IMG/VR virus record: IMGVR_UViG_3300029984_000001 | Coordinates: 186,001 to 250,000 of that record | Length of the DNA stretch: 64,000 nt | Direction: 5' to 3' (one strand) | Part shown: in pieces, positions 675-39,093 of the stretch | Layout: each line of letters starts with the position of its first letter | Position numbering within the stretch: the first letter of the stretch is position 1 | Translations under genes and position numbers: made by a program | Notes under the pieces: generated by a model | The model's input: only the letters and a program-made list of their open reading frames with translations | Told to the model about the DNA's origin: nothing | Database searches by the model: none

Positions 675-1402
675 CGATTTTAGACTATATCATTTACCTA
701 TAACGAAATATATAGGCAACCTTCCACTTCCATTTAAAAAACTCTTATATCCTTATCACGGAACGGTTTTACTTATATAAAATATATAAGCTGTACTCTA
801 CTTGCTTCGTGTATTATTTCTAATACCTTATTTTCAACTAAAGAATTTCGACTTTAGTATATAGCTTTCGATAGTCGTTGAACAAAAATAAAATAACAAT
901 TTTAAAATTTATAATTTTTAGATACATCAATCCATAATATTCTATATTTAATTTTATATAGTAATTGTTTATACTTATTTCTATATCAAACCATTCTTTT
1001 ATTTTTTCTACTAAGATATGTATCTTTATTCATTATATCTCCCGAATTACTTACGAAATAATAATCTTTTACTATTGGTAAATATAATGATATTTGTCTC
1101 CATTCTTCTTGTAAATGTATTTGATCTCTTACCATGAATTGTTTATTCATATTTTCACCTCCTTCTTTGTAAGCTATCTAAAAATAAATTAATTGTTATT
1201 TTATTTCTGATGCTGATTATCCCTTGTTAATAACACTTAGCACCTTTACAGGCTTTTATTTCAGCTTATGTCAGGTTCATATATTGTTTTTACTTTCGTA
1301 ACCATTTCTCTTATAATTATGGTTTATGAACATTTGGGGAACTTCCAGCAATTCAAAAGGTTATTCGACTCTATATTACTATAGAGAAGGGACACAGAGT
1401 TT
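675..1402 (-). mobile_element. Group I self-splicing intron in DNA polymerase (728 nt)
   Basis: Minus strand shows P (AATTGCTGGAA), Q (AATCAGCA), R (GTTCAACGACTA, ~872-883) and S (ATGATATAGTCT, ~682-693) elements. The 5' exon ends in U and the intron ends in G. IGS UCUGU-GUCC pairs with 3' exon ACAGA (P10) and 5' exon GGAU (P1, U-G wobble). Confidence 0.92.
986..1150 (-). pseudogene. Truncated NUMOD4/HNH homing endonuclease remnant inside the DNA polymerase intron
   Basis: RBS GGAGGTG, then MNKQFMVRDQIHLQEEWRQISLYLPIVKDYYFVSNSGDIM...KRMV* (54 aa). EEW..I....Y.VSN.G is a NUMOD4-like start; there is no HNH motif. Confidence 0.7.
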
Positions 1403-2464
1403 ATCCGTTATACACACGACACTTCTAATCATATTATTGTACTTCTCGAGCCTGTTGAAATATTGAAACTTATAATATACATATTCTTCTAATAAATCTT
1501 TAAAGTATTCTAGTTCTTTTGAACCTAGACCACCATCAGGAAATTTTTTCTTATCAAATCCTGGTAATACATTAGGGTCCATATAAGGAGTATTCAGTTT
1601 TTGTAATATATCCATAAAAGCTTTATTTACATGAGGATTCTCTAAGAAATCATATAGATTATTCTTATAGTAAATTCTATTTACATTCTCTTGATTTAAA
1701 CCACATATAATATTGTATATAATATCACAATCTTTTTTAGATGGCACATAATTAAATCCACAAGTTCCTATTATTTTAGCGAAACAAGAATCTGCTGATA
1801 TATTTTCTGATAATATTATTTCATCCTTTAATTTTCTATCTACACTTTCACAAATAATATTATCTATAAATGTAATCACTTCATTTAAGCATTCAAACTT
1901 AACGTTGTTCGCTAAGAAAGCTTCAAAGAATAATCCTGCTGAGGATATACAACTCTTCGCTTGAGTAGTTATTGAAGAAGCAACATGTAAATCATATAAA
2001 ATGCAACTATATTGACCCAAGCATCCGTATAACGAATTCGTATCAATTTTAAATAGTAATTGAAGAAGATTATACTTTTCAAATTCTTCTGAACCCTTAG
2101 GGAATTTGAACATTGTGTTCTTAGCTTTCTTTCTATTATCAAGATAAGAAGAAATTAGTGGTATTAAAGGATTTCTACAATCTGCGTGCCGTTTAAAAAG
2201 CACTCCAGAAGCACACATTATAGGTTCTCTTGCTATTATATATTCTATTACATCTAGTAATGTACTATTAACAGTTTTTTCTGTATAACTATTATACAGT
2301 TTAGCTGTAGGGTTATTAAATCTTTTTCCTATAGAACTATCTACAGCACTTTCTAAATCATTCTTACTTAATCCTGGAAAATTTAAAGGTAACATTCTTA
2401 GTGCTACCTCTTTATATTTCTTAATAATCTGCTTATTGTCTAATTCTAAAGCACCACAAGCCAA
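1403..2464 (-). CDS. Family B DNA polymerase, exon 1 (phiKZ/AR9-type polymerase domain)
   Basis: KIDTNSLYG (PolB KxxxNSxYG motif); ends ...SVVCITD at the intron; TTG start after AAGGAG. The ORF-track tail KLCVPSL is intron sequence. Confidence 0.92.
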
Positions 2465-3223: not shown

Positions 3224-3779
3224 ATGAAAACAGTGCTAACAACACTCAAATTTCCAGAAGGAGAATTTTATTCAAATGTTATATTAACAGAATATGAAGA
3301 TATCTTTAGACTAAGAGAAATATACACATCATGGAGAGAACTATGTAACATGTCGATTAACTTAGGTTTTAGAGCTAATAATATTCCAGATATATTAGGT
3401 ATATCTTTATTTTGTATACAAAATAATGCTTTAAGAATCCCTAATAAAAATAAAAGAGTATCATATACATTTAATTGTTATAAAAATGAAAAATGTATTC
3501 AGGTTAGATCGTGTGCGACTAAAACTGATTTAACCTCTTTTGGTAAAAATGATGTATATGATATATTTGTTTTTATAGACTTTTATAGAAAAGGAGAATG
3601 GGATGGAAGTTTTGATATTTATGAAATTCCAGCTTATGTCTTATATGAGGCTAAGGTTAATTCTACAAAATCATTAGCAGAACAACAACAAGAGGGGAAA
3701 ACGATCTAGATTTAGTATAAAAGAAAAAATAATAGAAAAAGGTTTATATCTAAATAGATCAACTTATAATTTATTTTAA
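3224..3779 (+). pseudogene. Bsp6I-family type II restriction endonuclease homolog, frameshifted and apparently catalytically degenerate
   Basis: WRELC..GFRANNIPD, DLTSFG, FIDFYRKGEWDGSFDIYEIP and KVNSTKSLAEQQQEG resemble Bsp6I-family proteins. Removing one A from 3698-3701 continues as KRSRFSIKEKII...YNLF* to 3779. Confidence 0.7.
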
Positions 3780-3799
3780 TGAAGGAGTGTGTAAAATAT

Positions 3800-5203
3800 A
3801 TGAGTTTATTGTCTGATAAATTCAAAGAACATCAAATGAAAATAAATAAAGATAAAGAGAATTGTGAAGTAAAATATTCAGAGAGTGATCGTATTAATGA
3901 TATTCTGGATAAATTATATTTTGGTAAAGAAGAGTGTAAAGATATGGGTTTAATAAGAGATACATTTTTAAGAAAAAGTTTAACAAGAGGAGGTTCATGT
4001 AATGTGAATCACTTTTTTATGGAGAATACTATAGATGAAACTATTGAAAGATTATTTGGAATATTTGTAAATAGCGATAATAATGATAATATAATAACAT
4101 CTACAAACGAAAATATACCAGAACCAATAAATGTAGGAGTAGCAGGATATATTTCTGATAATAGTATTAAAAATATGATAGATAATTGGCTTAATGAAGT
4201 GAAATATAGTAAAAAAGAAAATATGGTGCAAACTATTATGGAAATTGCAAATAAAACTTTATTAGATGAATTTATATTAGACACAATTCCTAATCTAAAT
4301 AAATATTTGATTTATGATAAAAGTAGAATCATTATACATGATGATATTGAATCATGTAGTATGTCTAAATTAAAAATGAAAGATGAATTCGCATTTAAAG
4401 GAAAATTAATTAATGATAAAAAGAAAACATATGATTTATTCGCATCTTATCATATATCTCCAAATTCAATATATGATTATGATAAAAGTTCAATATATTG
4501 GAAAGATTCAGAAGGATCTAGATTGGTATCAGATAATTTTAATATTAAATTAAAAAAGGATCAACTTGTTTATATAATATGGGATAAATCAGTTTATGTA
4601 GCATCAGGAGATGGTTTTCCAAAATTTAAATATTGTTGCGAATCTGGGAATCTTAATATAAATATAGACGCATTTATGAATGATCGTTCATATAATAGAA
4701 ATGGACATTACTATGGTACTGGAAGTAATTCTTCAAAAGATATAGTTATCATTGAACTTGAACAATTTGATTCAATGTCTATTAAAGAAAAGAAAAACTT
4801 ATTTCCTAACTCAGCAGAAGAATTTGTCAGTGAATGTAATAATAGTTTTACTAAGAGAATAAATGATAACTTATCTTGTATATATTCTAATAAAGGTTGG
4901 TATAATAATGTATATGTATATGTGGATAATTGTGTTATAAAAGAAGAATGGGATGGAAATATAGATTCTCTAAAATATATATATGAAGTGTGTAGATATA
5001 ATAGGAACCCTACATTACATCACACTGATTACATAAATCCTTTTAAAATTACAAGTAATGGGTATAAAGTTAAATCACCTTCAGAAGCATTTTTCGAGAT
5101 GTACCCAAATAATATATTACCAGATAATAATAAACCTAAATCATTATCTGAAATAATAGAAAGAAAAACCAAGAAACCTATATATTCAAAAAGGAGAGGA
5201 TAA
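3800..5203 (+). CDS. Hypothetical protein
   Basis: Long ORF; ATG at 3800 follows AAGGAG. Confidence 0.75.
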   Translation: MSLLSDKFKEHQMKINKDKENCEVKYSESDRINDILDKLYFGKEECKDMGLIRDTFLRKSLTRGGSCNVNHFFMENTIDETIERLFGIFVNSDNNDNIITSTNENIPEPINVGVAGYISDNSIKNMIDNWLNEVKYSKKENMVQTIMEIANKTLLDEFILDTIPNLNKYLIYDKSRIIIHDDIESCSMSKLKMKDEFAFKGKLINDKKKTYDLFASYHISPNSIYDYDKSSIYWKDSEGSRLVSDNFNIKLKKDQLVYIIWDKSVYVASGDGFPKFKYCCESGNLNINIDAFMNDRSYNRNGHYYGTGSNSSKDIVIIELEQFDSMSIKEKKNLFPNSAEEFVSECNNSFTKRINDNLSCIYSNKGWYNNVYVYVDNCVIKEEWDGNIDSLKYIYEVCRYNRNPTLHHTDYINPFKITSNGYKVKSPSEAFFEMYPNNILPDNNKPKSLSEIIERKTKKPIYSKRRG

Positions 5204-5924: not shown

Positions 5925-8045
5925 ATGAAAAGCGAATTTATTGATGACATTATACAAGACTTGAATGACATAGTTTTATACTATGATAACTATTATGTAT
6001 TTGCAGATTTTGCAAAAAATAAACAAATGATATTTGATGTAAGAACACTAAATATCAATAATTATGATGCTCATTATACTGGTATATTGAATCTGATGAA
6101 AGATACAATAGAAACAGAATATATGACAGATTACATGATTACATTAAAATTCGATGAAGATAAGTACTGTAAAATGAGTATACCTGATTTATGGATGAAT
6201 CTTATAATGTGGTATATCATAGTAAAGACAAATAGAGTAATTAAACCTAAATACATATTCTTTGAAGATTGTATCACAAAGAAAAACATTAAAGAGTACA
6301 TAGACAATTATCTTATAGATGAGTATACTACATCTATTGATATTATTGATTTAAATAATATTATTGATGATTGTCTTCATAAACTGTTAGATATTAATGA
6401 ATTTAGTATGTTCCTAGCTAATACTATCAACTTGGAAGACTTCGTAATACTAATGAATGAAGATCCAAGATTTAATGAATGTATACATGCCAATATAGGA
6501 AAAGACGTTCCTTTAGATGAAATAAAGAATGTAGGAATGGATTATACTATGGAAGCTGTAGAAAGAATTAAACAATCTAAACATGGATTGGCTAGTTTCT
6601 TTAGGGCACAAGAAGGAATTAATACGAAACAGTTTAAAGAGTTTGGTATCAATATTGGTACTAAACCAGACGGTATGGGTGGGATATTTCCTACAGTAGT
6701 AAATACAAACTTCTTAATTGGAGGTGTAAATGATTTACTATCATACCACATAGAATCCCATAGTGGGCGTCTTGCTCAAATAATAGTCGAAGATAACGTA
6801 TCCGATTCAGGATATTTTGCTAGACTATTGGGTATCAATAATATAGATTCTTTTAACCACGAAGATCCAAATTATGATTGTGGAACTAGAAATTTCGTAC
6901 CAGTTACTATAACTAGAAAGAATATAAGATTATACAATTCAAGGTTTTATAGAATGACTCCCAATGGTATGGAATATCTATTAAAAGAAACTGATACACA
7001 TTTATTTGACAAGACAATATTTTTACGTTCTCCAATGACATGTCGTTCTCATGTAGAAGGACATGGCATTTGTTATAAGTGTTATGGTCATCTAGCTTAT
7101 ATAGTTAGATTAATCAATGCAGGAAAAATAGCAGCAGAATTAATGTCATCTGAATTAACTCAAAAAATGCTATCTGCTAAGCATTTATTGGAAGCCGCAG
7201 TAAGAGCACTAATATGGAGTACAGGATTTGTTGACTATTTTATAGTCGATTGGAATAATTTGAAATTGAAACCTGATGTTGATTTTACTAATTGTAAACT
7301 TGTTATTGCAGCTAATACTATATGGATAGATTCTGAAGAAGAAGATGAAATGAGTGGGGAAATGAGAGAATATATTCCTAATTTCCATATTCAACTATCA
7401 GATGGTAATAGAATACAAATAAAAACTGCTGATTGTAATGACTTGTTTTTAACAGCTGATTTAAATAACTCTATAAGAGAATATGGAATACCTGGAGATA
7501 ATCATGAAATATTGATAGATCTAGATAAACTTAAAGGTTTACCTTTGTTCTCTGTAGATAATATTAATAACGATCTAAATGATACGTTAAATAAAATCAG
7601 AAAAACTATCAACCATAAAGATACAACAGAAGGTTTCAATATGCAACAAATTCTGGAAACATTACTGCATAATTTAGGAGAAGGAGGAATGCATTTATCA
7701 TCCGTACATGCAGAAACAATTATATCTAATCAAATCAGAAGTACAGATTTTATATTAGATAGACCCGATTGGAGTGTTCCTAATCAGAAATATAGAATAC
7801 TTGCACTTAAAACAGCTTTAACAAACCATCCTTCAATTAGTGTTACTATGGCATTTGAAGGTATTAAGGCTGCATTATACAATCCATTAACTTTTAAGAA
7901 GAATAAACCTAGTTTCTTAGATTTATTCTTTGTAGTAAAACCACAAGAATACCTTTCAGATAAAACAAAAGTTACTAAAACAACTTTTGGTGATAAAGAT
8001 TCGACTGGGAAAACGATATTTATGAAACGTGATAAATTAGAATAA
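5925..8045 (+). CDS. Multisubunit RNA polymerase beta' C-terminal subunit (probably non-virion RNAP)
   Basis: DSGYFARLL (bridge helix), LRSPMTC...GICYKCYG (Zn site) and GKIAAELMSSELTQKMLSAKH (trigger loop). The ~700 aa size and early-type promoter favour the non-virion enzyme. Confidence 0.92.
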   Translation: MKSEFIDDIIQDLNDIVLYYDNYYVFADFAKNKQMIFDVRTLNINNYDAHYTGILNLMKDTIETEYMTDYMITLKFDEDKYCKMSIPDLWMNLIMWYIIVKTNRVIKPKYIFFEDCITKKNIKEYIDNYLIDEYTTSIDIIDLNNIIDDCLHKLLDINEFSMFLANTINLEDFVILMNEDPRFNECIHANIGKDVPLDEIKNVGMDYTMEAVERIKQSKHGLASFFRAQEGINTKQFKEFGINIGTKPDGMGGIFPTVVNTNFLIGGVNDLLSYHIESHSGRLAQIIVEDNVSDSGYFARLLGINNIDSFNHEDPNYDCGTRNFVPVTITRKNIRLYNSRFYRMTPNGMEYLLKETDTHLFDKTIFLRSPMTCRSHVEGHGICYKCYGHLAYIVRLINAGKIAAELMSSELTQKMLSAKHLLEAAVRALIWSTGFVDYFIVDWNNLKLKPDVDFTNCKLVIAANTIWIDSEEEDEMSGEMREYIPNFHIQLSDGNRIQIKTADCNDLFLTADLNNSIREYGIPGDNHEILIDLDKLKGLPLFSVDNINNDLNDTLNKIRKTINHKDTTEGFNMQQILETLLHNLGEGGMHLSSVHAETIISNQIRSTDFILDRPDWSVPNQKYRILALKTALTNHPSISVTMAFEGIKAALYNPLTFKKNKPSFLDLFFVVKPQEYLSDKTKVTKTTFGDKDSTGKTIFMKRDKLE

Positions 8046-8100
8046 ACGTTGCATAAAATATAAACTTAAGAAAGTTAACAAAGATGGGAGTATATAAAAA

Positions 8101-8364
8101 ATGAGTAAACTTAAGAATCAAACTGCATTGAAAAAACAATACGAAAGAAGAGAAATATTTTCTAGTTTTAAATATTCAATTATGAATATTTTCGTAGGAG
8201 ATAAAATAGAAGTAACGCTTAAACTTGGAGAAAATAAAATCCTTAGTACATTATCAGGACAAGTATCAAAGATCTTTAAAGATTCTTTAGAACTTACTGA
8301 TACAAGATTAAATAAAGTTGAAATTTATATAAACCAAGTACATAAAATCAAAAAACTCAGATAG
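8101..8364 (+). CDS. Small hypothetical protein, possible Sm/SH3-like beta-barrel
   Basis: GDKIEVTL...LSGQVSKIFKDSLELT...VEIYINQVHKIKKL. Confidence 0.55.
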   Translation: MSKLKNQTALKKQYERREIFSSFKYSIMNIFVGDKIEVTLKLGENKILSTLSGQVSKIFKDSLELTDTRLNKVEIYINQVHKIKKLR

Positions 8365-8371
8365 TTTAAAA

Positions 8372-8399
8372 TGTGGGTGGGGTAATTCCCACACCACAT
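8372..8399 (+). terminator. Stem-loop after 8101-8364
   Basis: GC-rich imperfect inverted repeat TGTGGGTGGG...CCCACACCACA. Confidence 0.5.
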
Positions 8400-8512
8400 A
8401 TCTTATGATTACATTACATAGGATTATCCTATTTTTGTAAATATAAAAAATTATAATTGTATATTATAATAGTGAATGAATATATAATATTAATTATAAA
8501 GGAGAGATTAAT

Positions 8513-8689
8513 ATGATTAAAACTTTAGTAAAAAAGTTATGTGTAAAACTATTAAACGAAATGGAAGGAGATTACACATATAATAATGAAAAAAATATTA
8601 ATTATACTAACCCTTTACAAGATAGAGAAAGGAGAAGAAAAGAATTAGCTCAAACTATATCAAAACATATTGTACTTAAAAAATGTTAA
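8513..8689 (+). CDS. Small hypothetical protein (58 aa, not in ORF track)
   Basis: Early motif at 8457-8469, RBS AAGGAG, MIKTLVKKLCVKLL...VLKKC*. Confidence 0.6.
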   Translation: MIKTLVKKLCVKLLNEMEGDYTYNNEKNINYTNPLQDRERRRKELAQTISKHIVLKKC

Positions 8690-8705
8690 TTTAAAATAAT
8701 TAAAA

Positions 8706-10829
8706 ATGAGGGAGCGATTACATATGAATATTAATGTAAATGAATTAGGAACTAATAAGGAATTTATCACAGAGGTAAGAGAGATATTAAATGGAAAAGG
8801 TCTTATAGTAGATTATAAAATTACGACTAAAATTATTAACACTTTTTTCGAAGTATTAGATTTAAAAAATAAATATATAAAAGATAAAGAAGTTTTAGGA
8901 TTAAACGTGAAAGAATATGGAGGGATATTAGCTGAAAGAGATGGTATACTTTTGGATAATCATACGATTATTACTATGATACTACCAGCAATATCATCTG
9001 TGATGAATAAATATGAAGAAGAAAAAATAAAAGAAAAAGAAGATGAATTAAAGGAGAAAAAATTTATGAAAGACTATTTAAAGAACAATGATAAGCTTTT
9101 AAAATCTGTTTACAAAGATACATGTATATCAAGTTCAATATATAGTAGTAATGTTCTTGGAAGTATTCTTAATATAATAATAGATGTTTTTGATGATGAA
9201 AAATTTAAAGAAAACCCTTTTGAATATGCATCTGAAAAATTAATAAGATATAATATAAAAGTTGTAGATGATAAACAATTTGAATTTGTTATAAGAGTAA
9301 TGATTGATAATATAAATGTATTTATAAAGAACAAAGAATATATTACAAAATTAGAAGAAGATTTGACTGAAGAAGAATTAGAATTTATTAATCGTAACCC
9401 TGATATAAATAGGGAGTTATATTTATTAGATAAAAAAGGTTCTAAATTAATACCAAAAATAATAGGAGGAAATACTACAAAAGAAGAATTCGAGGAATTC
9501 AATAAGATATCAAATTCTATTTTAGATAAATTCGATCTTATTCCATACTATAAATCATTTGCAAGAATCCTATCTCTTCATAAGATGGAAGAAAATAAAT
9601 TGCCAAATATTATAATTGATGATATGAGAGAGATGTTAAATAGTGTTAAACATTTAGAACCAATAAAAACAAATATAAAAGATATTCCAACTTATAGAGG
9701 AGGGTTTGGTTTACGAAGAAAAGTAGAACCTAAAGATAGATATACTAATTGTAAATTAAGTTCTAAAGAAATGAAAGAAATGTTTAGTATAAGAGATGTT
9801 GTTAAAGAAAATATGGCTAAAAATGATGAAATGAAAAAAGAAATAGAAGATTTTATTAGTAAAATGGATACATATAAATTAATGGAATTTAGAAAAATAA
9901 GTAAAAAGGAATTAAATAAAAGATATAGTAAGGATAAAGAAATCTTTAAAAACTTAAATAATTTAGATATCAAACTACCATATAATACTATAAATCCAAT
10001 TAATACTACTATGCGTGAAGATTTTAGAAGAAAAAGGGAACAATTAATGAAAGATTTTCATAAAGATACTAATGAAATTTGTAATCTTATTAAAGACTTT
10101 GAAGCTTCATCTATAGATAGAAAAAACTCTTTCTTAGATTCATTATTTAATCCAAAAGATGATAAAATTAAATGTACAGAATCATGTAATTCTTCAACAA
10201 CAGCTAAAGAACAAATTAAAGAGAAGAATATTATGATAGGAGACCAAGTTCAATTTGTTACTAAAGATGAAAAATTTTATTATAAATGTATAGTGAATAA
10301 TCTTAGTGAAAGAAATATAGAATTTTGTTGTTTAAATGGAAATGATACCTCATATCAACATCCTATATTTAATCTTGATGATATTTTAATAATATCTAAA
10401 GTTCCTAGATTTCAAAAAAATTTTTCAACTAGACCTATTAATTTAGATATACCTGAATATTTCATAAAAAGAATAAATGATTTACAATCAGGTAAATATG
10501 AAAATTCATTTCTTGAAAGATATACATGTAAATGTGGAAAAATAACAGGAAAAATGAAAGAGAATATTACTTGCGGATTATGTAGTACTAAAGTAAAATA
10601 TGTAGATGATACATCTATATATACAACACTTAATATTAAAGGAATTAATATAGGAGATAAAATTAAGATTTTTACTGAATTAAAAGTTTATGATAATTGT
10701 ACTCTTGAAGGAGTATTTGTTGATGATGATGTAATTGTAGTAACAGATAATACTTTACCAAATACTTGTTATTATGGAACTATGCAAATAGGTATTAAAG
10801 GAATCAAAAATTTAATAAAATTAAGTTAA
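8706..10829 (+). CDS. Large early mosaic protein with coiled coils, Sm-like domains and an RNAP beta'-type zinc ribbon
   Basis: 707 aa; ERYTCKCGKITGKMKENITCGLCSTKVKYVDD near the C-terminus. Confidence 0.7.
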   Translation: MRERLHMNINVNELGTNKEFITEVREILNGKGLIVDYKITTKIINTFFEVLDLKNKYIKDKEVLGLNVKEYGGILAERDGILLDNHTIITMILPAISSVMNKYEEEKIKEKEDELKEKKFMKDYLKNNDKLLKSVYKDTCISSSIYSSNVLGSILNIIIDVFDDEKFKENPFEYASEKLIRYNIKVVDDKQFEFVIRVMIDNINVFIKNKEYITKLEEDLTEEELEFINRNPDINRELYLLDKKGSKLIPKIIGGNTTKEEFEEFNKISNSILDKFDLIPYYKSFARILSLHKMEENKLPNIIIDDMREMLNSVKHLEPIKTNIKDIPTYRGGFGLRRKVEPKDRYTNCKLSSKEMKEMFSIRDVVKENMAKNDEMKKEIEDFISKMDTYKLMEFRKISKKELNKRYSKDKEIFKNLNNLDIKLPYNTINPINTTMREDFRRKREQLMKDFHKDTNEICNLIKDFEASSIDRKNSFLDSLFNPKDDKIKCTESCNSSTTAKEQIKEKNIMIGDQVQFVTKDEKFYYKCIVNNLSERNIEFCCLNGNDTSYQHPIFNLDDILIISKVPRFQKNFSTRPINLDIPEYFIKRINDLQSGKYENSFLERYTCKCGKITGKMKENITCGLCSTKVKYVDDTSIYTTLNIKGINIGDKIKIFTELKVYDNCTLEGVFVDDDVIVVTDNTLPNTCYYGTMQIGIKGIKNLIKLS

Positions 10830-10834
10830 ACTTT

Positions 10835-10866
10835 AAAGGGTGATTTGTTTCACCCTTTATTTTTTA
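10835..10866 (+). terminator. Rho-independent terminator
   Basis: AAAGGGTGA...TCACCCTTT followed by a T-run. Confidence 0.75.
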
Positions 10867-10906
10867 TTCTTACAACATCTAAAACTTATTATTGAGGTGA
10901 TTAGAA

Positions 10907-12517
10907 GTGATTAAGATTGTTGTGGAACATAGTAAAATTATTATAAATGATTACGATTTAGGTGATTGTGAATCTTTAGAGAATTTCTTTAGTATATTTG
11001 ATCCTAGTACACACACAAGATTTCCATTTGGAATGTATTATAAACAAGAAGAAAGACAATTAGTTATACCAAGAGGAGTAGATATTTCTTATATAAAGAA
11101 TAAATTTAATTGTATACCACAATTAAATAAAAGACACGATCCTATGGACAAGATAGAACCAATAAAATTAAGACACCCACCAAGAGATAATAATCAAAGA
11201 GAAACATTAAGATTTATGTTAGGAAAAAGTGAATATTATTATACAACAACAAAATCTATGTTAGCAGTAAATTTAGCTCCAGGAGTTGGAAAAACATATT
11301 GTTCTATAGCAACTTCAGCTTTCATTGGATATAGAAGTATAATGTTAACCTCATCATTATCATGGATAGAACAATGGAAACAAGAAATATTAAAATATAC
11401 AGATATTAAACCTAGAGAGATATTCATTATTGCAGGCACTCCATCTATTCATTCTATATTAAAACAAGGTGTACATAAATTTAAATTCATATTAGCTAGT
11501 ATGGATACAATTATATCATATGGTCAAAAATACGGGTTTGATAAAATATCTGAACTATTTGTAAAATTAAGAGTAGGAATTAAATATATAGATGAAGCTC
11601 ATTTAAATTTTAAAGCCATGATGTTGATAGATTTCTATACAAATACATATAAGAATTATTATTTAACAGGTTCCCCTTGTCGTTCTAGTGAAGACCAAGA
11701 TAGAATATATAAGATATATTTTAAAAATGTCCCTTCTATAGATTTATTTGATGAGACTAAAGATCCTCATACTGATTATTTAGGTATGAGATACAATTCT
11801 CATCCGACTGCGGCTGATATATCTTATTGTAAGAATAAATATGGATTAGATAGAAATAAATATACAGGGGATTATATTATAAGACGTCCTAATTTTTATA
11901 ATATCTTAAGAGTAATAATAGATAGAACTCTTGCTAAGAATGGTAAGATTTTATTTTATATAGGAGTAAATCGTTCAATAGAAGTAGTAAAAGCATGGAT
12001 GGAAATGTATTATCCTTTTTTAATTGGACATATAGGAATATACACAAGCACTACTTCAAAGGATATCAAAAGATCACAATTAGATAAAAAATATATACTA
12101 TCTACAACTAAATCTTGTGGAGCTGCTATGGATATAAAAGGTCTAGCTACTACTGTTATACTGGCTGAACCATTCAAATCGGAACCCTTAGCAATACAAA
12201 CTTTGGGTAGAACAAGAGATGACGATACTGAGTGTATAGAGGCTGTTGATGAAGGATTTAACGCCATAATGAGATTTTACTACCAAAAGCAACCTATTAT
12301 GAAAAAATATGCTTTGTCAGTAAATGATGTTAGATATAAAGATGAAACTCTAGAAGATAAGATAAATGAAATATTTGATAGATATTATGGTGATGGTGAA
12401 TTCCCTGTAATCTATATAGATAACAAAAAGATATTTATGCTAAGACAAGAATTAAGACCTATAAATGAATATGATTCTAAAGGAAGAAAAGTATTTATGA
12501 AAAGAGATAAATTTTAG
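10907..12517 (+). CDS. SF2 (DEAD/DEAH-like) helicase
   Basis: LAPGVGKT (Walker A), YIDEAH (Walker B), LTGSP and QTLGRTR motifs; GTG start after GAGGTG. Confidence 0.92.
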   Translation: MIKIVVEHSKIIINDYDLGDCESLENFFSIFDPSTHTRFPFGMYYKQEERQLVIPRGVDISYIKNKFNCIPQLNKRHDPMDKIEPIKLRHPPRDNNQRETLRFMLGKSEYYYTTTKSMLAVNLAPGVGKTYCSIATSAFIGYRSIMLTSSLSWIEQWKQEILKYTDIKPREIFIIAGTPSIHSILKQGVHKFKFILASMDTIISYGQKYGFDKISELFVKLRVGIKYIDEAHLNFKAMMLIDFYTNTYKNYYLTGSPCRSSEDQDRIYKIYFKNVPSIDLFDETKDPHTDYLGMRYNSHPTAADISYCKNKYGLDRNKYTGDYIIRRPNFYNILRVIIDRTLAKNGKILFYIGVNRSIEVVKAWMEMYYPFLIGHIGIYTSTTSKDIKRSQLDKKYILSTTKSCGAAMDIKGLATTVILAEPFKSEPLAIQTLGRTRDDDTECIEAVDEGFNAIMRFYYQKQPIMKKYALSVNDVRYKDETLEDKINEIFDRYYGDGEFPVIYIDNKKIFMLRQELRPINEYDSKGRKVFMKRDKF

Positions 12518-15999: not shown

Positions 16000-16869
16000 C
16001 TACCCTAAATATATTTTTTCAGAATAATTCATTAATTGATTTTGAATGTGTTGTTCAATATTTACTATGAATGTATCTCCATCTTTACTACAAACTTGTA
16101 TTTGTCTGCCACCTTCTAACATTGTATAAGAATTATTTAATAAATCAAATGATTCTTTGAAGAAATAAAGATTAGCAGATTCTTGTTTTATATATTCTAT
16201 TATTTGATTATTTGTAACTGGAATTAATATACCAGCATCATTTTCTTGTACTACAAATTTATTTCCAATATTCTCTTTACCATGAGCCAATAAAGCATTT
16301 TCTGTTACACCAACAATAGAGGTGGTATAGGCTCTCTTATGTGAAGGGTATATAACTCTATCCCAAGTAATAATAGTTATATTTTCTACTTCAGCCCCTC
16401 TTGAAGTTTGATTGACAGTACCTAATGCTCTTAACGAAAAAGATGGTTTATCTCCATCCATTAAATCTAAATTAAATGCTTCACCGTAAGAATTATTCGA
16501 ACCTTTTATATGAGCTTTGATATCATTACCGTCCACCCAAAACTTAACTATTTTATTACATCTTAAAGATGGTTCTATAATTTGCTGTCTAGAAATTTCT
16601 TTAGACATTGGATGACCTTCTTCTCCATATAAGTTTCCAGTTGCTACTAATTCAGTCAATCTATCAGCTTTTAAAGCTGGTTTCATTTCCTTATCTGAAT
16701 AGAATCTTTTGTTTCTATTTTGTATATTCATATCTTGTAATATAACTTCAGCAGTTACTCTTCTACCATCATTATCAACTATCTTCATTTCTGTCTCATG
16801 CATACATGTAGCAGTTTCTATAATAACATACCCTATTTTCTTATCATAATTATTATAAGTCATACCCAT
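16000..16869 (-). CDS. Prohead (maturation) protease, T4 gp21/phiKZ gp175-like
   Basis: NRNKRFYS, LYGEEGHP, SFSLRALG and TWDRVIYPSH motifs. Confidence 0.9.
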   Translation of the reverse strand: MGMTYNNYDKKIGYVIIETATCMHETEMKIVDNDGRRVTAEVILQDMNIQNRNKRFYSDKEMKPALKADRLTELVATGNLYGEEGHPMSKEISRQQIIEPSLRCNKIVKFWVDGNDIKAHIKGSNNSYGEAFNLDLMDGDKPSFSLRALGTVNQTSRGAEVENITIITWDRVIYPSHKRAYTTSIVGVTENALLAHGKENIGNKFVVQENDAGILIPVTNNQIIEYIKQESANLYFFKESFDLLNNSYTMLEGGRQIQVCSKDGDTFIVNIEQHIQNQLMNYSEKIYLG

Positions 16870-19939: not shown

Positions 19940-21700
19940 ATGGCTACAGGAGGAACAAGAAAAAAGAAAATAGTATCTGATGGTTATAGCAATAGTCCGT
20001 TTGCAGGAATTTCAGGACAATTTAGTAAAGTTGCTAAGGAAATTCAAATACAAGAAGGTGTCGATTTATTTGGGCAACCTGCATTAGCATTAAATAATCC
20101 TAAAGTAGTAAATACTTTAGAAAGTTTCTTTATAGAAGGTACTTATGATCAAAAATTATATGATGGTACTACTAGAGGATATAATGCAAGAGCTTTACAA
20201 GAATATAAAAATGATATGAAAGAGTTATTTAAAAATGACGTTGAAGCTATTACTGAGTATACAGCAATGAATTCAGTGAACCCTATTGTTACAACAGGAT
20301 TAGCAATGCATAAATTAATTGCATTAAGAAATATATTTAGACAAGGTGTAATTCAAACTAACGTTGCAGTTGAACCTAGATTTACAATCAAGATGCAACA
20401 TAGATATTTAATAACTCCAGATGGTAAAGAATTAGATTTAGTATTAGACCAAAATAAATTATCTGATGCTTTCAATTCAATTAACCCTAAGAGAGTTGTA
20501 ACTTTAGAATTTACTGGAAATACTTGTAATACTGCTACTTTTGTTCCTGGTAAAAGATTAGTGGAATTATGTGGTGGTGTATTAGGTAGAGACAATCTAA
20601 ATACAGATACCGAAATTCATGCTATTTACATAGAAGTACCAGATGAAGCTGCTATTAAAGCAGGTACTCTTGGAGCTACTAAAATAGAAAAGATTAAAAA
20701 GAGAATTCAATTTACTCCTCAATATGGTCCTAATAATATTACAGGGTTTAATCAACCTTTAGATTTAACTAAATTCGTTGAAGGTGCAACCGATTTATTT
20801 TCAGGTACATTAACTAATAATGAAATGATGTTAATAAGTGGATTAGGAATTATAAAGAAAGTAGATATTAGAATTCAATTAGATCCTTCTAATGGTTTAC
20901 TATCAACATGTAGAGCAGGTTGGAGACATGATGAAACATTGGTCACTATTCCAAATGCTAACCCAATGAATATTCCAATATCTCCTGAAGAAATTAAGGA
21001 TATCCAAGCTATGTATGGAATAGATCAACTATCTATGTATATGTCTATAATTAATGATGTATTAGGAAATGTTAAGGATGATAGTATCAGAAAAGATTTA
21101 TATGCTTCTTTTGATAATATGAATGCGTCTGAAAGAAAAGTTAGTTGGTTTGATTTCGAACCAAGAGAAGGATATAATAGAGATCATGTAAGTTGGAGAT
21201 ATTCTTCATTCATGGATATATTTGATACATTTGTAACAGATTTATTATATATCTTGAATGATGAAGACGTTACAGTATCTATATTTGGTAGACCAGATGT
21301 AATTAGAAAGATTACTCCTACTGATTACAGCTACCAAGCACCATCTAGTATAGGACCAGTAAGTCTTGAATATACTAGAACTATTGCTACATCTGACAAC
21401 AGAGTATACAACTTTGTATCTTCTCAAAAGTTAGGAGCTAGTAATGACTTAACAGTTATTCTAAATCCAAATAATACAGATAGAATTATATATAGAGTTT
21501 ACGATTATCAATTCTACGTTTCAAATGAAATCAAGAATGCTGATAATCATGTATTACCAGGTGTTCATGCATTTGAAAGATTCAAATTCTTAGAATATCA
21601 ACCAGTACAAGGTAAGTTCAGAGTATTTAATCCATCTGGTAGAAATGATGATAATACAAAATATCAAGATCAACTTAAAGATTTAAGAGATATAGCATAA
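19940..21700 (+). CDS. Major capsid protein precursor
   Basis: 586 aa in the head module with its own promoter, strong RBS and terminator. HK97-like C-terminal features (ISPEEIKDIQAMYGID..., F.R...EYQPVQG); probable propeptide ending ITE(106). Confidence 0.8.
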   Translation: MATGGTRKKKIVSDGYSNSPFAGISGQFSKVAKEIQIQEGVDLFGQPALALNNPKVVNTLESFFIEGTYDQKLYDGTTRGYNARALQEYKNDMKELFKNDVEAITEYTAMNSVNPIVTTGLAMHKLIALRNIFRQGVIQTNVAVEPRFTIKMQHRYLITPDGKELDLVLDQNKLSDAFNSINPKRVVTLEFTGNTCNTATFVPGKRLVELCGGVLGRDNLNTDTEIHAIYIEVPDEAAIKAGTLGATKIEKIKKRIQFTPQYGPNNITGFNQPLDLTKFVEGATDLFSGTLTNNEMMLISGLGIIKKVDIRIQLDPSNGLLSTCRAGWRHDETLVTIPNANPMNIPISPEEIKDIQAMYGIDQLSMYMSIINDVLGNVKDDSIRKDLYASFDNMNASERKVSWFDFEPREGYNRDHVSWRYSSFMDIFDTFVTDLLYILNDEDVTVSIFGRPDVIRKITPTDYSYQAPSSIGPVSLEYTRTIATSDNRVYNFVSSQKLGASNDLTVILNPNNTDRIIYRVYDYQFYVSNEIKNADNHVLPGVHAFERFKFLEYQPVQGKFRVFNPSGRNDDNTKYQDQLKDLRDIA

Positions 21701-25187: not shown

Positions 25188-27107
25188 ATGAAAATCGTAA
25201 AGAATAATGTAATTAATAAGGAAGCAACGAGATTATTTCAATCAGAGACATTAAAAGGATTAGCAGAATCAATAATAACTTCAGCAGGACCACAAGGATC
25301 AGGTACTAAAATAATATTACATTTAGCAAACGATCCAGAGAGTCCTAATAGAAATGTACCTATAGTTAAATATAGTAAAGATGGTCATAGTATCTTAAGT
25401 TATATATCTCATTGTGATAATGGAATGCTTTGCAACTCTGTATGTAACGATGTTTATGAAATGACTACTTATGTAAAGAAGAAAATTGGAGATAATTCAA
25501 CCGCTACTGTATGTATGGCTTCACGAATATTTGATAATCTTGTTAAAGTAGAAACCGATACAAAACTTCCTCCAAGAGAAATAATCAAACAATTTAAAAA
25601 AGCTGTTGAAATGATTACAGTTAGAGTAAAAGAAAAAACACAAGAATTTACTCCTGAAGAAGCTTATAATATTGCATACATATCTTCTAATGGTGATGAA
25701 GAAGTTGCAAATAACATAAAACAAATTTACGAAGAATTTGGTAAAGAAGTATATATAGATATTGGAATTTCGAATGATGAACAACATAAAATGAAAATAA
25801 TGGATGGTATGAGTATTAGTACTGGATACAATAGTCCTGCTTATCGAAATGATTTGCAAAAGAATATTGCATCTATTCCAAAACCAAGAATATACTATTT
25901 CCAAAATATGATTGATACTCCTGCTCAAATTGCATTATTAGCAGCAATTGTTGTAAAAAATATAACAGATCCTTACAGAACTAATAAATTAGAAAATGTA
26001 ATTCCTACAGTAATATTAGCACCACAATTAGCTAATGATGCTATCGTTGAATTAAATGAAGTTATTAGACTTATGCAAATGTATGATAAACCTGAACATA
26101 TTAAGAACAAACCACCGTTATTAATTGTTACTGGGATATTTGAAGATGAGGCCACAGATGATATTGCTAGATTGTGTGGATGTCCTCCTATTAGAAAATA
26201 TCAAAGTTTAGAACAACTAGAAAAAGATAAAGAATCAGGTAAAGCTCCTACTACTGAAACTATTGTAGATAATTGGTATGGAAGTGCTGATGTAGTTGTA
26301 GCTGATGCTGTTAGTACTAAATTTATTAATCCATTATTAAAATATACAACTAAAGGTGAAGAGAGAAAAAGAGTATGTGAACAAAATAAAGAGAAATTTG
26401 TTCCTGCTGAAGATGATAATGAAGAAATCTTCAGTGCTCATTATAATTCATTAGTTACTGCATTAGAAGCTCAATTGGAATTAGAAATAAATAATAATGC
26501 TACTATGGATATTACAGGTTCATTAACTAGAAGAATCAATTCATTAAAAGCTAAAGTCGTAGAATATCAAGTTGGTGGTATTGCAATAGCTGATAGAGAT
26601 TCTTTAAAAGATTCAGTTTGGGATGCTATAAGAAATTGTAGATCAGCGGCTAAATCTGGTGTTGGATTAGCATGTAATATGGAAGGTTATTTTGCTTGTC
26701 TAGAAATATTGAACAATACAAAAGCAGATGATGATTCTACAGTTATCAAATTTGTAGAAATGATTCATGATTCTTATGTAGAATATATATCTTCATTATA
26801 TGAATTTACATTTGGTATTGATAAAGATGAATGTTTAAGATTATTAGAAACTAATTCTAGAACAAATGGAATAGTAGATTTATCTCAAGGATATGATAAA
26901 GAAACTGTAGATAAGGTGATATACAATACAAAAATTAAATCATCTATAAATGCAGATATAGTTACATTAGAAGCTTTATCTAAAATATTATCTTTAATGA
27001 TGACATGTGCTCAAACTCTTATACCAGAACCATTATTAGATTCATATACAGCATTTGTAGATAATAGAAAAATTCAAGATAAATTAGTTAAAACATGTAG
27101 ACTATAA
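25188..27107 (+). CDS. GroEL-like phage chaperonin
   Basis: SAGPQGS, YSKDGHSIL, IGDNSTATV, AYISSNGD, DGMSISTGYNSP and DAIRNCRSAAKSGVGLA motifs. Confidence 0.88.
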   Translation: MKIVKNNVINKEATRLFQSETLKGLAESIITSAGPQGSGTKIILHLANDPESPNRNVPIVKYSKDGHSILSYISHCDNGMLCNSVCNDVYEMTTYVKKKIGDNSTATVCMASRIFDNLVKVETDTKLPPREIIKQFKKAVEMITVRVKEKTQEFTPEEAYNIAYISSNGDEEVANNIKQIYEEFGKEVYIDIGISNDEQHKMKIMDGMSISTGYNSPAYRNDLQKNIASIPKPRIYYFQNMIDTPAQIALLAAIVVKNITDPYRTNKLENVIPTVILAPQLANDAIVELNEVIRLMQMYDKPEHIKNKPPLLIVTGIFEDEATDDIARLCGCPPIRKYQSLEQLEKDKESGKAPTTETIVDNWYGSADVVVADAVSTKFINPLLKYTTKGEERKRVCEQNKEKFVPAEDDNEEIFSAHYNSLVTALEAQLELEINNNATMDITGSLTRRINSLKAKVVEYQVGGIAIADRDSLKDSVWDAIRNCRSAAKSGVGLACNMEGYFACLEILNNTKADDDSTVIKFVEMIHDSYVEYISSLYEFTFGIDKDECLRLLETNSRTNGIVDLSQGYDKETVDKVIYNTKIKSSINADIVTLEALSKILSLMMTCAQTLIPEPLLDSYTAFVDNRKIQDKLVKTCRL

Positions 27108-36227: not shown

Positions 36228-36434
36228 TTAATAAAATTCTATAGGAGTTAATTTCTTTTGTGTTTGTGGGAGTATTAAAGTAAAATTATATAATGCTTGT
36301 ACTGTTTCATTACTAGATACATGAACATTCTTTCCACCTAAATCTATATAGTATCTTTTAGAATTTATATATTCATCTAATTCTTTATTAGATTCAATTG
36401 TATAAGCTACTTTAGCGGTTAACTGATCACCATC
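36228..36434 (-). CDS. RNA polymerase beta' N-terminal subunit, exon 2
   Basis: Begins GAT GGT GAT CAG (DGDQ), completing the catalytic DYDGD after splicing; 68 aa. Confidence 0.92.
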   Translation of the reverse strand, partial: DGDQLTAKVAYTIESNKELDEYINSKRYYIDLGGKNVHVSSNETVQALYNFTLILPQTQKKLTPIEFY

Positions 36435-37665: not shown

Positions 37666-39093
37666 ATAGTCTCCTTCTACTTTTTTGAGATGCAAATTAC
37701 TGATGTTTAAAGTATCTCTAAATCTAGATGATGTATTAGTACCTATATCTTCCTCTCTTATTTTTGGATAATAAGGATAGAATTCATTATTTATATAAAT
37801 ACCTTCTGTTTCTACTGTAGATGAAATTCTAATTTTATTTGGGAATTGACCGAAATAAGTATTCATAGGATATCTTGTTAATAATACATGTTTATCTTTA
37901 GACATTTCTACAGCAGCCATATAAAAAATATCACACCAACATAATCTTCTATGATAAATAGATGATACATCTTCTTTATCCATTTCATCTTTAGTATCTG
38001 TATGAGGAGCATTGTTACCTTTAAAGTACATATATCTCATTTCACCTGTAGTTAATTCTACTTCTATAGGAATGAATCTATTTGAATATCCATGTATAAA
38101 TCTTTTCATTTGTTTTTTAATTACATCATCTGAAAATTGCACATAAGGATTCTTTACTTGTACTACTTTAGGATTACCCTTATCATCATATAATACTTTT
38201 TCATTAGTACCACCGAATTCATTTTCAAAGAATCTTCTACACCAGAATAATATATACGGATATAGATTTGCTAAGGCTGATGCTAACGGTAAAGCACAAT
38301 GTCTTAAATCAACCATTAAATCATCTACTGATTCTACATTTAATTCAGGAGCCGATATAACTAATCTAGAAGAATAATCTGAAGTCTTTGCCATAACTGT
38401 TCTTTTTATGATTCCATATTTCTTTCCTAGATTTGGTTCTTGAGTAAACCAATCATATACTCTAACTAATAATTCCTGTATTCTTCCTATAGTAGCAGAT
38501 GTCATTGAAAATCCAAAATCATCGGATTCTCTTAATGCAGCTGAGGCTATAATTAAAGAATTATATATCTTATTAATTTCTCCTACTCCTAAAGTTTTAT
38601 TTCCAGTATTTACATCTCTATAGTATGCAGGTATTACTATATACTTATCTAAAAATAATGTATTATTCTTTTTATTTCTATTTATAAAATCTATATTTAT
38701 ATCTCTTTTGAGAGAGTCTGTAGATTTTATTTTTATCTTATCTATATTATTTTTTAAGAAGTCTACCCCATTTTCTCCATTCTCATCTTCTTCTAATTGT
38801 CCTTGAGAATTAATCTTAAAATTCTTAGTCCCATGAACACATTCTTTTATTTTTCTATCCATTCTACACCATATTTTATATGATAATGGATCTATGAAAT
38901 TTTTGTGTAGGTCAATATAGGCAAATATATTGGCTCTTTGATCTTTAGATAAACCAAAAACTTCATTAGATAATAAACCGTCTGATGTAGGTACTCCATT
39001 ACTAAAAAAATATATAGGATTGGTAATCTGTTTTAAATTATTCTCTTTAATTAATCGACTAGGACTTAATGTCTCTAACTCTAAATGTTTCAT
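37666..39093 (-). CDS. RNA polymerase beta' N-terminal subunit, exon 1 (probably virion RNAP)
   Basis: DGLLSNEVFG, VIPAYYRD, KTSDYSSRLVISAP, LLTRYP and ...VEGDY. Spliced product is 544 aa. It lies among structural genes. Confidence 0.92.

What the first reader, a model, noticed from the sequence alone, without database searches (positions are those of the whole stretch)
10440..10610. RNA polymerase beta' zinc-ribbon segment embedded in an unrelated early protein
The 707-aa ORF contains ENSFLERYTCKCGKITGKMKENITCGLCSTKVKYVDD. This has the Y-x-C-x-CG...G-x-x-C-x-x-C-x-x-x-V layout of the beta' N-terminal zinc-binding domain (bacterial KDYECLCGKY...GVICEKCGVEV). It is flanked by two small Sm/SH3-like domains and has no other RNAP motifs. 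Inference: a piece of an RNAP gene was captured, either as a neutral chimera or as a decoy or adaptor surface, since the zinc-binding domain contacts sigma factors and antiterminators.
Basis: partly seen in the sequence, partly recalled or inferred. Interest (0 to 1): 0.6.

Follow-up and report, generated by a model that had tools for sequence, protein, structure and literature searches.

The report
Polymerase zinc ribbon inside orphan protein
A 38-residue zinc-binding module that normally sits near the start of a giant phage's own RNA polymerase beta' subunit also occurs, as a true evolutionary copy, inside a fast-evolving protein of unknown function encoded between two transcription genes; what it does there is still unknown.

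Summary
The window is part of a 263.6-kb, about 25% GC jumbo phage from peat metagenomes, with AR9/PBS1-like split RNA polymerases. ORF 8706-10829 (707 aa; likely start 8724) has a four-Cys ribbon at aa 600-637 (window 10503-10616).

This is not a generic zinc ribbon. A profile built only from the zinc-binding domains (ZBD) of 120 metagenomic non-virion RNAP beta'N proteins scores it at 47.7 bits (E 1e-13). It keeps 15 of the 17 family-conserved positions, including the clade signature TKVKYVDD. Among 38,880 PHROGs the best hit is the beta'N family. No Pfam zinc-ribbon model appears among its hits.

The phage's own nvRNAP beta'N, outside the window, has the same module. The virion beta'N, inside the window, has none.

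Two syntenic relatives (beta'C 79% and 73% identical) carry proteins with the same small-barrel domain at this position (one a full-length ortholog), and neither has the ribbon. So gain in this lineage is the most parsimonious reading. The donor cannot be named: identity to the phage's own beta'N is 17/37, which equals the family median.

An unrelated metagenomic protein carries two tandem copies of the module.

Function (decoy, adaptor or nucleic-acid knuckle) remains untested.

The parts
8724..10829 (+). Gene of the host protein (P0001). The ORF opens at 8706 (707 aa). The likely start is ATG 8724 (701 aa), with RBS GAGGGAG at 8708-8714. Residue numbers in this report use the 707-aa ORF.
   Evidence: syntenic ortholog P0130
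10206..10415 (+). Small beta-barrel 1 (aa ~501-570): an N-terminal helix plus a five-stranded barrel of Sm/Hfq/SH3-like type.
   Evidence: AF2 with custom alignment gives pLDDT >90. Hfq matches at Z 7.3-7.6, rmsd about 2 A over 54-59 aa; CgeA matches at Z 8.8. Homologous to barrels of P0130, P0131 and the L005 532-aa protein.
10416..10502 (+). Linker (aa 571-599). The motif LDIPEYF is shared with the L005 protein. FIKRINDLQSGK possibly aligns with the start of P0130's middle barrel.
   Evidence: low-identity alignment, tentative
10503..10616 (+). Captured beta'-type zinc-binding module (aa 600-637). Cys608 is at 10527-10529, Cys610 at 10533-10535, Cys623 at 10572-10574 and Cys626 at 10581-10583. 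The clade signature TKVKYVDD is at aa 628-635.
   Evidence: AF2 pLDDT about 95
10629..10826 (+). Probable diverged second barrel (aa ~642-707); weakly supported.
   Evidence: barrel profile iE 0.003 before inclusion; pairwise BLAST not significant; AF2 pLDDT 30-40
10834..10859 (+). Terminator-like hairpin followed by a T run, directly after the gene.
8513..8689 (+). 58-aa ORF just upstream. It is probably co-transcribed, because an AT-rich promoter-like spacer (8400-8512) follows a hairpin at 8374-8398.
   Evidence: read from the sequence; not tested
8101..8364 (+). 87-aa single-barrel protein of the same barrel family. It is conserved at this position in relatives (85 aa in L005, 90 aa in L015).
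   Evidence: iE 0.005 before inclusion
5925..8045 (+). Non-virion RNAP beta' C-terminal subunit (upstream neighbour).
   Evidence: phrog_3015 at E 4e-57; AR9 non-virion beta'C is the best named match
10907..12517 (+). SF2 (Swi2/Snf2-Rad25-like) helicase (downstream neighbour). In jumbo phages this helicase is linked to RNAP genes.
   Evidence: same beta'C-x-helicase order in AR9; PMC7824862
37585..39093 (-). Virion RNAP beta' N-terminal subunit (exon 1). It has no zinc ribbon, so it cannot be the source of the module.

Best explanation
SHOWN:
- The segment is a domain-sized (about 38 aa) evolutionary copy of the zinc-binding domain of a jumbo-phage non-virion RNA polymerase beta' N-terminal subunit.
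- It now sits inside the C-terminal array of Sm/SH3-like small barrels of a fast-evolving, lineage-restricted protein.
- That protein's gene lies in the conserved slot between the nvRNAP beta'C gene and the RNAP-linked SF2 helicase gene.
- The closest relatives lack the ribbon at this slot. The full-length ortholog P0130 has a barrel where the ribbon-bearing stretch sits.

INFERRED:
- The ribbon was gained in this lineage by recombination, from a donor that cannot be named.
- It still folds as a four-Cys Zn ribbon.
- It serves as one more small binding unit in a modular, transcription-associated accessory protein. It would contact either whatever the authentic beta' ZBD contacts in this polymerase clade, or nucleic acid near the polymerase.

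The protein is not an RNAP subunit fragment, and it has no catalytic RNAP parts.
For: Homology:
- own beta'N matches at E 1e-7 to 3e-9.
- phrog_2987 is the best of 38,880 PHROG families.
- the ZBD-only profile scores 47.7 bits, E 1e-13.
- 15 of 17 positions conserved at 70% or more are kept, against 4 of 20 variable positions matching the consensus.
- AF2 pLDDT is about 95 over the ribbon.

Not generic:
- no Pfam zinc-ribbon model is among the segment's hits (the best hits are unrelated families at E 0.07 or worse).
- no PDB sequence hit.

beta' identity of the family:
- The carrier gene has AADFDGD in exon 2.
- It matches the AR9 and Noxifer non-virion beta'N genes.
- phiKZ gp55 has the equivalent four-Cys ZBD in its solved structure (PMC7618050).
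- nvRNAPs carry a Zn-ribbon like bacterial beta' (PMC7824862).

Gain in this lineage:
- L015 is fully syntenic, with beta'C 79% identical, and its 850-aa ortholog P0130 has three contiguous barrels and no ribbon.
- L005 (beta'C 73% identical) has a 532-aa barrel-array protein without a ribbon.

Transcription context:
- The beta'C-x-helicase order is shared with AR9.
- The helicase's distribution tracks the RNAP genes.

Reality of the gene and of the junction:
- The same protein occurs on 14 contigs.
- At least 19 peat runs hold more than half of the sampled words of window 8000-11000.
Against: - No functional data exist, no partner is known, and no RNA runs are available.
- Retention of the conserved positions could simply reflect a recent copy from an unsampled donor rather than selection. 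The FastTree branch is long: 0.58 against a median of 0.15.
- The barrels are slightly acidic (pI 5.0-5.7) and the ribbon's net charge of +3 is ordinary for the family (median +2). Nothing therefore points specifically to nucleic-acid binding.
- The orthologs work without the ribbon, so it is not essential to the family.
- The N-terminal ~490 aa have no detectable relatives other than P0130.
- The 'slot of the middle barrel' statement rests on a 28%-identity alignment plus domain coordinates.
Confidence: 0.6

Rival explanations
1. ZBD decoy or mimic. The copied ribbon competes with the polymerase's own ZBD for a partner, such as a sigma-like fifth subunit, nascent RNA or a host factor, and so regulates or protects phage transcription.
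For: The clade-specific motif YVDD is kept. It is not a universal feature of beta' ribbons, so it may mark a contact surface. The gene lies between the nvRNAP beta'C gene and the RNAP-linked helicase gene. A second, unrelated protein (P0133) carries two tandem copies, which suggests the module is useful on its own.
Against: No partner has been identified. The AR9 gp226-type subunit is not detectable in this genome. Orthologs lack the ribbon. Keeping the motif may reflect recency rather than selection. No complex prediction was run, because there was no justified candidate pair.
Confidence: 0.15
2. Neutral chimera. The ribbon arrived by illegitimate recombination in a hypervariable locus and merely acts as a stable spacer in the barrel array, with no specific ligand.
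For: The locus is highly plastic. Gene content between beta'C and the helicase differs in all three relatives, and P0001 is only 28% identical to P0130 while beta'C is 79% identical. The ribbon-bearing stretch (about 72 aa) is the same length as the barrel it stands in for (about 68 aa). Charge is unremarkable.
Against: All four Cys and 15 of 17 conserved positions are intact in a protein that otherwise diverges very fast. The gene is identical or nearly so across many peat samples. That is no test of selection, but it shows the form is stably maintained.
Confidence: 0.2
3. Ancestral feature, not a capture. The family originally had the ribbon, and the L015 and L005 lineages lost it.
For: Only three lineages are known. 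The ribbon lies on a long branch and is equidistant from all sampled beta'N ribbons, which would fit an old event.
Against: It needs two losses against one gain if the beta'C identities (79% and 73%) reflect the branching order. P0130 has a regular barrel at that position. The exhaustive search found no other ribbon-bearing member of the family.
Confidence: 0.1
4. Generic or convergent zinc ribbon with only a chance likeness to beta'.
For: The module is short. Pfam's Rpb1 domain 1 model does not hit it, but that model does not hit the phage's genuine beta'N either.
Against: The clade-specific profile gives E 1e-13. phrog_2987 is the best of 38,880 families. No Pfam zinc-ribbon family is among the hits. 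There are eight consecutive identical residues, TKVKYVDD, beyond the Cys ligands.
Confidence: 0.02
5. The ribbon is supplied in trans to the virion RNAP, whose beta'N lacks one.
For: The virion beta'N (window 37585-39093, minus strand) has no Cys ribbon. Jumbo-phage RNAPs are built from split subunits.
Against: Orthologs lack the ribbon. AR9 nvRNAP works without a ZBD (PMC7618050). No evidence of association was found, and none was sought.
Confidence: 0.03

Closest known systems
N-terminal zinc-binding domain of RNA polymerase beta' (E. coli Cys70/72/85/88; phiKZ nvRNAP gp55; PHROG phrog_2987 positions ~36-91)
   Same: The same four-Cys layout, Y-x-C-x-C-G ... C-x-x-C-x-x-x-V. Significant sequence-profile homology to the jumbo-phage beta'N version. 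Confident ribbon model.
   Different: It stands alone in a non-RNAP protein. The flanking beta' elements (the IFG motif before it, the FGW/clamp after it, NADFDGD) are absent. Its ligand and role are unknown.
This phage's own nvRNAP beta'N (G000:63085-64275 plus 65472-65918, split by an HNH-endonuclease insertion)
   Same: The ribbon is 17/37 identical, including TKVKYVDD, which is encoded by eight identical codons.
   Different: It is no closer than the family median (17/37). The derived residues that this gene shares with its nearest relative P0010 (NQR.HNGAICP) are absent from the copy. The codon identity has p of about 0.02 given this genome's codon bias, so it is weak evidence.
P0130 (850 aa, Logan contig of SRR21285876) and the L005 532-aa protein: positional counterparts in related phages
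   Same: The same slot between nvRNAP beta'C and the SF2 helicase. Homologous first barrel. P0130 also shares the N-terminal region.
   Different: Three (P0130) or four to five (L005) barrels and no zinc ribbon. Only 28% identity (P0130), although beta'C is 79% identical.
P0133 (531 aa, metagenomic contig L016)
   Same: A non-RNAP protein carrying beta'-ZBD-type modules (domain E-values 7e-13 and 8e-8 against the same profile).
   Different: An unrelated protein, with two tandem ribbons near the C-terminus, no barrels and a different genomic context. It represents an independent capture or a separate lineage.
Sm/Hfq and SH3-like small beta-barrels
   Same: Barrel 1 has the helix-plus-five-strand topology. 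Z is 7-9 with rmsd about 2-3 A.
   Different: No sequence-level membership. Z values in this range are common for small barrels. Ring formation and RNA binding are untested. The barrels are acidic.

Membership tests
RNAP beta' N-terminal zinc-binding domain (module level) | Four Cys as CxC-x12-CxxC, with the conserved aromatic residue two positions before the first Cys and Gly after the second | tested here: met
   RYTCKCG...CGLC at aa 605-626. All 120 beta'N relatives share the layout.
RNAP beta' N-terminal zinc-binding domain (module level) | Significant profile similarity to bona fide beta'N ribbons, better than to generic zinc ribbons | tested here: met
   47.7 bits, E 1e-13. phrog_2987 at E 5.6e-5 is the top PHROG. 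No Pfam zinc-ribbon model is among the hits.
RNAP beta' N-terminal zinc-binding domain (module level) | Ribbon fold superposable on a solved beta' ZBD | tested here: inconclusive
   AF2 pLDDT is about 95 for aa 605-634, but the fold searches were dominated by barrel 1 and never tested the ribbon.
RNAP beta' N-terminal zinc-binding domain (module level) | Binds one Zn2+ | not testable with these tools
   Needs metal analysis of purified protein.
RNAP beta' subunit (protein level) | Clamp, double-psi barrel with NADFDGD, and the other Rpb1 domains | tested here: not met
   There are no RNAP family hits outside aa ~589-642. The protein ends 70 aa after the ribbon, and the next gene is a helicase.
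Sm/Hfq-like or SH3-like small barrel | N-terminal helix followed by a strongly bent five-stranded barrel | tested here: met
   Barrel 1 model has pLDDT >90. Hfq matches at Z 7.3-7.6, rmsd 1.7-2.3 A over 54-59 aa. Z below 8 may reflect only a common arrangement.
Sm/Hfq-like or SH3-like small barrel | Sm1/Sm2 sequence motifs, ring assembly, RNA binding | not tested
   No Pfam LSM/Hfq hit. Oligomer prediction was not run.
Jumbo-phage nvRNAP fifth (sigma-like) subunit, gp226/gp68 type | Sequence similarity to AR9 gp226 | tested here: not met
   There is no gp226 match anywhere in the genome. P0130 against gp226 is not significant. These subunits are known to be too divergent for this test to exclude the role.

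The most novel reading that the evidence does not exclude
The transplanted ribbon is a natural ZBD mimic. By presenting the polymerase's own clade-specific ZBD surface (Y-V-D-D and neighbours) on a separate, fast-evolving protein, the phage would titrate or recruit whatever binds the nvRNAP zinc-binding domain. That partner could be the still unidentified promoter-specificity subunit, nascent RNA, or a host or rival-phage factor. The module would then be a regulator of jumbo-phage transcription and a handle for finding that partner. The tandem-ribbon protein P0133 would be a second example of the same strategy.
Probability: 0.12. Interest if true: 0.75.

Novelty: new variant of a known kind. 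Interest (0 to 1): 0.42.

Why it matters
The beta' zinc-binding domain is one of the universal landmarks of multisubunit RNA polymerases, and I know of no report of it outside a beta' subunit. Two searches of the held literature surfaced none, although these searches were not designed to find such a report.

Here it appears as a free-standing module in a non-polymerase protein next to transcription genes. A second, unrelated metagenomic protein carries two copies. That shows the ribbon can behave as a mobile domain.

If the copy keeps the original binding surface, it offers a simple bait for finding what the ZBD contacts in jumbo-phage non-virion polymerases. The promoter-specificity subunit of this clade is still unidentified. 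If the copy is neutral, it is a clean, datable example of domain replacement inside a hypervariable phage locus.

Tried and rejected
Searches and tests that led nowhere:
- Nucleotide and tblastn searches of 50,697 phage records with the locus and with P0001 gave no match.
- Word-index protein searches, whole protein and aa 495-707, found only the protein itself.
- Searches of viral contigs with P0001, P0130 and the barrel alignment returned only the same phage.
- The AR9 hypothetical protein in the same slot is not similar.
- AR9 gp226 has no homolog in this genome, and P0130 against gp226 is not significant.
- PDB sequence searches with the ribbon segment and with P0130 found nothing.
- The ESM Atlas look-alike search gave only sub-threshold hits.
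- A single-sequence AF2 model of aa 495-707 was poor, pLDDT 48. It was replaced by the run with a custom alignment.
- Variants in the 90% cluster differ by 0-3 residues, none in the ribbon, so they are uninformative about selection.
- The relatives' contigs (L005, L008) do not hold a beta'N, so the donor question could not be tested with them.
- A weak barrel-like match to the 215-aa protein downstream of beta'N (E 0.006) was not pursued and is not used.

Ideas weighed and set aside:
- Recent copy from the phage's own beta'N: 14 of 17 shared residues use identical codons against 11.9 expected, and the TKVKYVDD run has p of about 0.02. This is too weak to support the idea.
- Nucleic-acid binding judged from charge is not supported.

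Steps not run or cut short:
- Complex prediction was not used. No candidate pair was justified beyond gene neighbourhood.
Full report
WHAT THE WINDOW IS

The window is G000:C1:186001-250000 of a 263,571-bp virus record that is estimated complete. It is about 25% GC. The DNA is found in many peat metagenome runs. No phage in the 50,697-record collection matches the locus at the nucleotide level.

The RNA polymerase genes are of the split jumbo-phage type, and their best named relatives are in Bacillus phages AR9/PBS1.

THE OBSERVATION

ORF 8706-10829 (+) encodes 707 aa and contains the quoted peptide exactly. The likely start is ATG 8724, preceded by GAGGGAG. Public gene calls give 701 aa, and the ortholog begins the same way. 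I keep the 707-aa numbering throughout.

The ribbon is N600-T636, with Cys608, 610, 623 and 626. The homologous stretch is aa 600-637 = window 10503-10616. Neither Pfam nor PHROGs recognises the whole protein.

IS IT A BETA' RIBBON OR JUST A ZINC RIBBON?

Three independent lines say it is a beta' ribbon.
- A search of the phage's own genome with aa 560-650 finds one other place, at E 1.4e-7. That place is the ribbon of a 396-aa ORF at G000:63085-64275, and pairwise BLASTP gives E 3e-9. The ORF belongs to phrog_2987 at E 2.5e-43, and its second exon carries AADFDGD. It matches the non-virion beta'N genes of AR9, Noxifer and phiR1-37.
- Scanned alone against all 38,880 PHROGs, aa 585-650 hits phrog_2987 best, at positions 37-91 with E 5.6e-5. 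Against Pfam, no zinc-ribbon model is among its hits. The PDB sequence search finds nothing.
- All 120 metagenomic beta'N homologs that were listed carry the signature RY-C-CG...C..CGTKVKYVDD. A 59-column profile built from those ribbons plus the phage's own beta'N, without P0001, scores P0001 at 47.7 bits, E 9.7e-14. The next non-RNAP ORF scores 7 bits.

P0001 keeps 15 of the 17 positions that are at least 70% conserved. It matches the consensus at only 4 of the 20 variable positions. In the whole genome only these two real ORFs have the CxC...CxxC pattern.

The link to the cellular beta' ZBD rests on the literature. phiKZ gp55 has a four-Cys ZBD like that of E. coli RNAP, while the AR9 nvRNAP lacks one (PMC7618050). 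nvRNAPs carry a Zn-ribbon in the N-terminal helical array, as bacterial beta' does (PMC7824862). My alignment agrees: AR9 has a gap where phiR1-37, Noxifer and this phage have the ribbon.

The second beta'N of this phage lies inside the window at 37585-39093 (-). It belongs to phrog_2986 and is of the virion type. It has no ribbon.

THE HOST PROTEIN AND ITS LOCUS

The gene lies between the nvRNAP beta'C gene (5925-8045, phrog_3015 at E 4e-57) and an SF2 helicase gene (10907-12517). AR9 has the same beta'C-x-helicase order, but its 'x' is an unrelated 196-aa protein. Iyer et al. note that this Rad25-like helicase tracks the RNAP genes and often neighbours beta'C.

The exhaustive HMMER search of 1.84 billion representatives found one full-length relative, P0130 (850 aa, E 2.4e-19), and a 97-aa single-barrel protein, P0131. 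Its other hits were beta'N fragments and P0133.

P0130 lies on a contig that is gene-for-gene syntenic with the window. Its beta'C is 79% identical to the window's, yet P0130 is only 28% identical to P0001. The gene therefore evolves very fast.

A third relative, L005, has beta'C at 73% identity. Its slot holds several small ORFs and a 532-aa protein made of barrels. Only the first barrel of that protein matches P0001, at 36% identity.

DOMAIN ANATOMY

With a custom alignment, AF2 models aa 505-566 at pLDDT >90 and the ribbon at about 95. The last 65 aa remain poor.

Barrel 1 is a helix-plus-five-strand small barrel. Its best matches are CgeA (Z 8.8), Hfq (Z 7.3-7.6, rmsd 1.7-2.3 A) and Sm/LSm, Tudor and designed SH3 barrels. 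Scores in this range show fold class, not function.

A profile seeded on barrel 1 finds three contiguous barrels in P0130 (635-707, 712-779, 781-844) and four or five in the L005 protein. Before it was included in the profile, the C-terminal stretch of P0001 (aa ~642-683) matched only weakly, at iE 0.003. The 87-aa protein at 8101-8364 and its 85-aa and 90-aa counterparts matched at a similar level.

In P0001 the stretch between the two barrels, which carries the ribbon, is about 72 aa long. It sits where P0130 has its 68-aa middle barrel. This rests on a low-identity alignment, so I treat it as likely rather than proven.

ORIGIN OF THE RIBBON

No ribbon is detectable in the syntenic loci of L015, L005 or L008. 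With beta'C identities of 79% and 73%, one gain in the window's lineage is more parsimonious than two losses.

The donor is open.
- Identity to the phage's own beta'N ribbon is 17/37, exactly the median against 116 family members.
- The best matches (21/37) are P0132 and P0017, which come from other phages.
- The phage's own beta'N is 28/37 identical to its nearest relative, P0010.
- A FastTree of the 37-aa segments puts the copy with P0132, P0134 and P0135 (support 0.79) on a long branch: 0.58 against a median of 0.15. With so few sites this is only a hint.
- At the DNA level, 14 of the 17 shared residues use the same codon, against 11.9 expected. The 8-codon identical run TKVKYVDD has p of about 0.02 under this genome's codon usage. 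That is too weak to claim a recent intragenomic copy.

A SECOND CASE

P0133 (531 aa, contig L016) is unrelated to P0001 and to RNAP. It carries two tandem ribbons of the same type, with domain E-values of 6.8e-13 and 8.1e-8 against the ZBD profile. A neighbouring gene matches a PHROG family of unknown function. The beta' ribbon has therefore left its polymerase more than once.

FUNCTION

Nothing here tests function. I commit to this reading: a still-folded Zn ribbon acts as an extra binding unit in a modular, transcription-associated accessory protein.

Points in favour:
- the genomic slot,
- intact ligands and conserved positions,
- retention of the clade-specific YVDD motif.

Points against a strong claim:
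- the orthologs do without the ribbon,
- retention may reflect recency rather than selection,
- charge gives no hint of nucleic-acid binding,
- no candidate partner exists, since no gp226-type subunit is detectable.

For that last reason I did not spend the complex-prediction job.

Nothing was laid.
- From that call on, no letters of 8857-8892 (aa ~51-63) were sent to any search tool. Later calls used only P0001 parts from aa 498 on, or other proteins.
- No alternative genetic code was used.
- Nothing human-like, toxin-like or belonging to a virus of animals, people or crops was met.

VERDICT

The capture is probably a gain in this lineage from an unnamed beta'N donor. The decoy or adaptor function is an open hypothesis.

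This is a known domain in a new architectural context. It is moderately interesting, mainly as a possible bait for the unknown ZBD partner of jumbo-phage polymerases.

Noticed in passing
G000:C1:63085-66805 (locus L003:3086-6803), outside the window: The nvRNAP beta'N gene is split after ...LLNRNP by an insertion carrying an HNH endonuclease ORF (L003:4519-5301). Exon 2 (L003:5473-5916) holds AADFDGD. A second HNH endonuclease ORF follows at L003:6063-6803.
   Followed up: partly
window 36285-39093 (-): The virion RNAP beta'N (phrog_2986) has no zinc ribbon and is also interrupted. An HNH endonuclease ORF (36549-37421, minus strand; phrog_59 at E 9e-29) lies between the main ORF (37585-39093) and a short piece that matches the end of the profile (36285-36434).
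   Followed up: partly
window 8046-10906, with L005:10113-14112 and L015:5616-9639: The stretch between nvRNAP beta'C and the SF2 helicase is hypervariable. Phages with beta'C 73-79% identical differ in the number of genes, gene lengths and barrel counts there. In the more distant L008 the helicase follows beta'C directly.
   Followed up: yes
L016:198-1793 (protein P0133): An unrelated 531-aa metagenomic protein carries two tandem beta'-ZBD-type ribbons (aa ~410-449 and 452-481) and a further Cys-pair motif near aa 215-245. Its N-terminal part has no assigned family.
   Followed up: partly
whole genome G000: No homolog of the AR9 nvRNAP promoter-specificity subunit gp226 is detectable. The fifth subunit of this phage's nvRNAP is therefore unidentified. 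The 474-aa ORF at window 3779-5203, just upstream of beta'C, also has no family.
   Followed up: partly
window 8101-8364 (+): An 87-aa protein with a single barrel of the same family lies directly after beta'C. It is conserved in position in the relatives (85 aa in L005, 90 aa in L015).
   Followed up: partly
window 8374-8398 and 10834-10859 (+): GC-rich hairpins bracket a possible small operon of the 58-aa ORF plus P0001. The second hairpin is followed by a T run. The spacer 8400-8512 is very AT-rich with TATAAT-like repeats.
   Followed up: no
Nothing was laid, and the stretch was kept out of all later searches.
   Followed up: no
window 16000-16869 (-), 19940-21700 (+), 25188-27107 (+), 1379-2464 (-): Context genes: a probable prohead protease (by synteny with the Peptidase_S77 gene of L015), the major head protein (phrog_20655), a GroEL-like chaperonin (phrog_5725) and a DNA polymerase fragment (phrog_2927).
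   Followed up: no
protein P0010 (closest beta'N relative, 79% identical): Its ribbon reads CECRAT, with Arg in place of the Gly after the second Cys that is otherwise 95% conserved.
   Followed up: no
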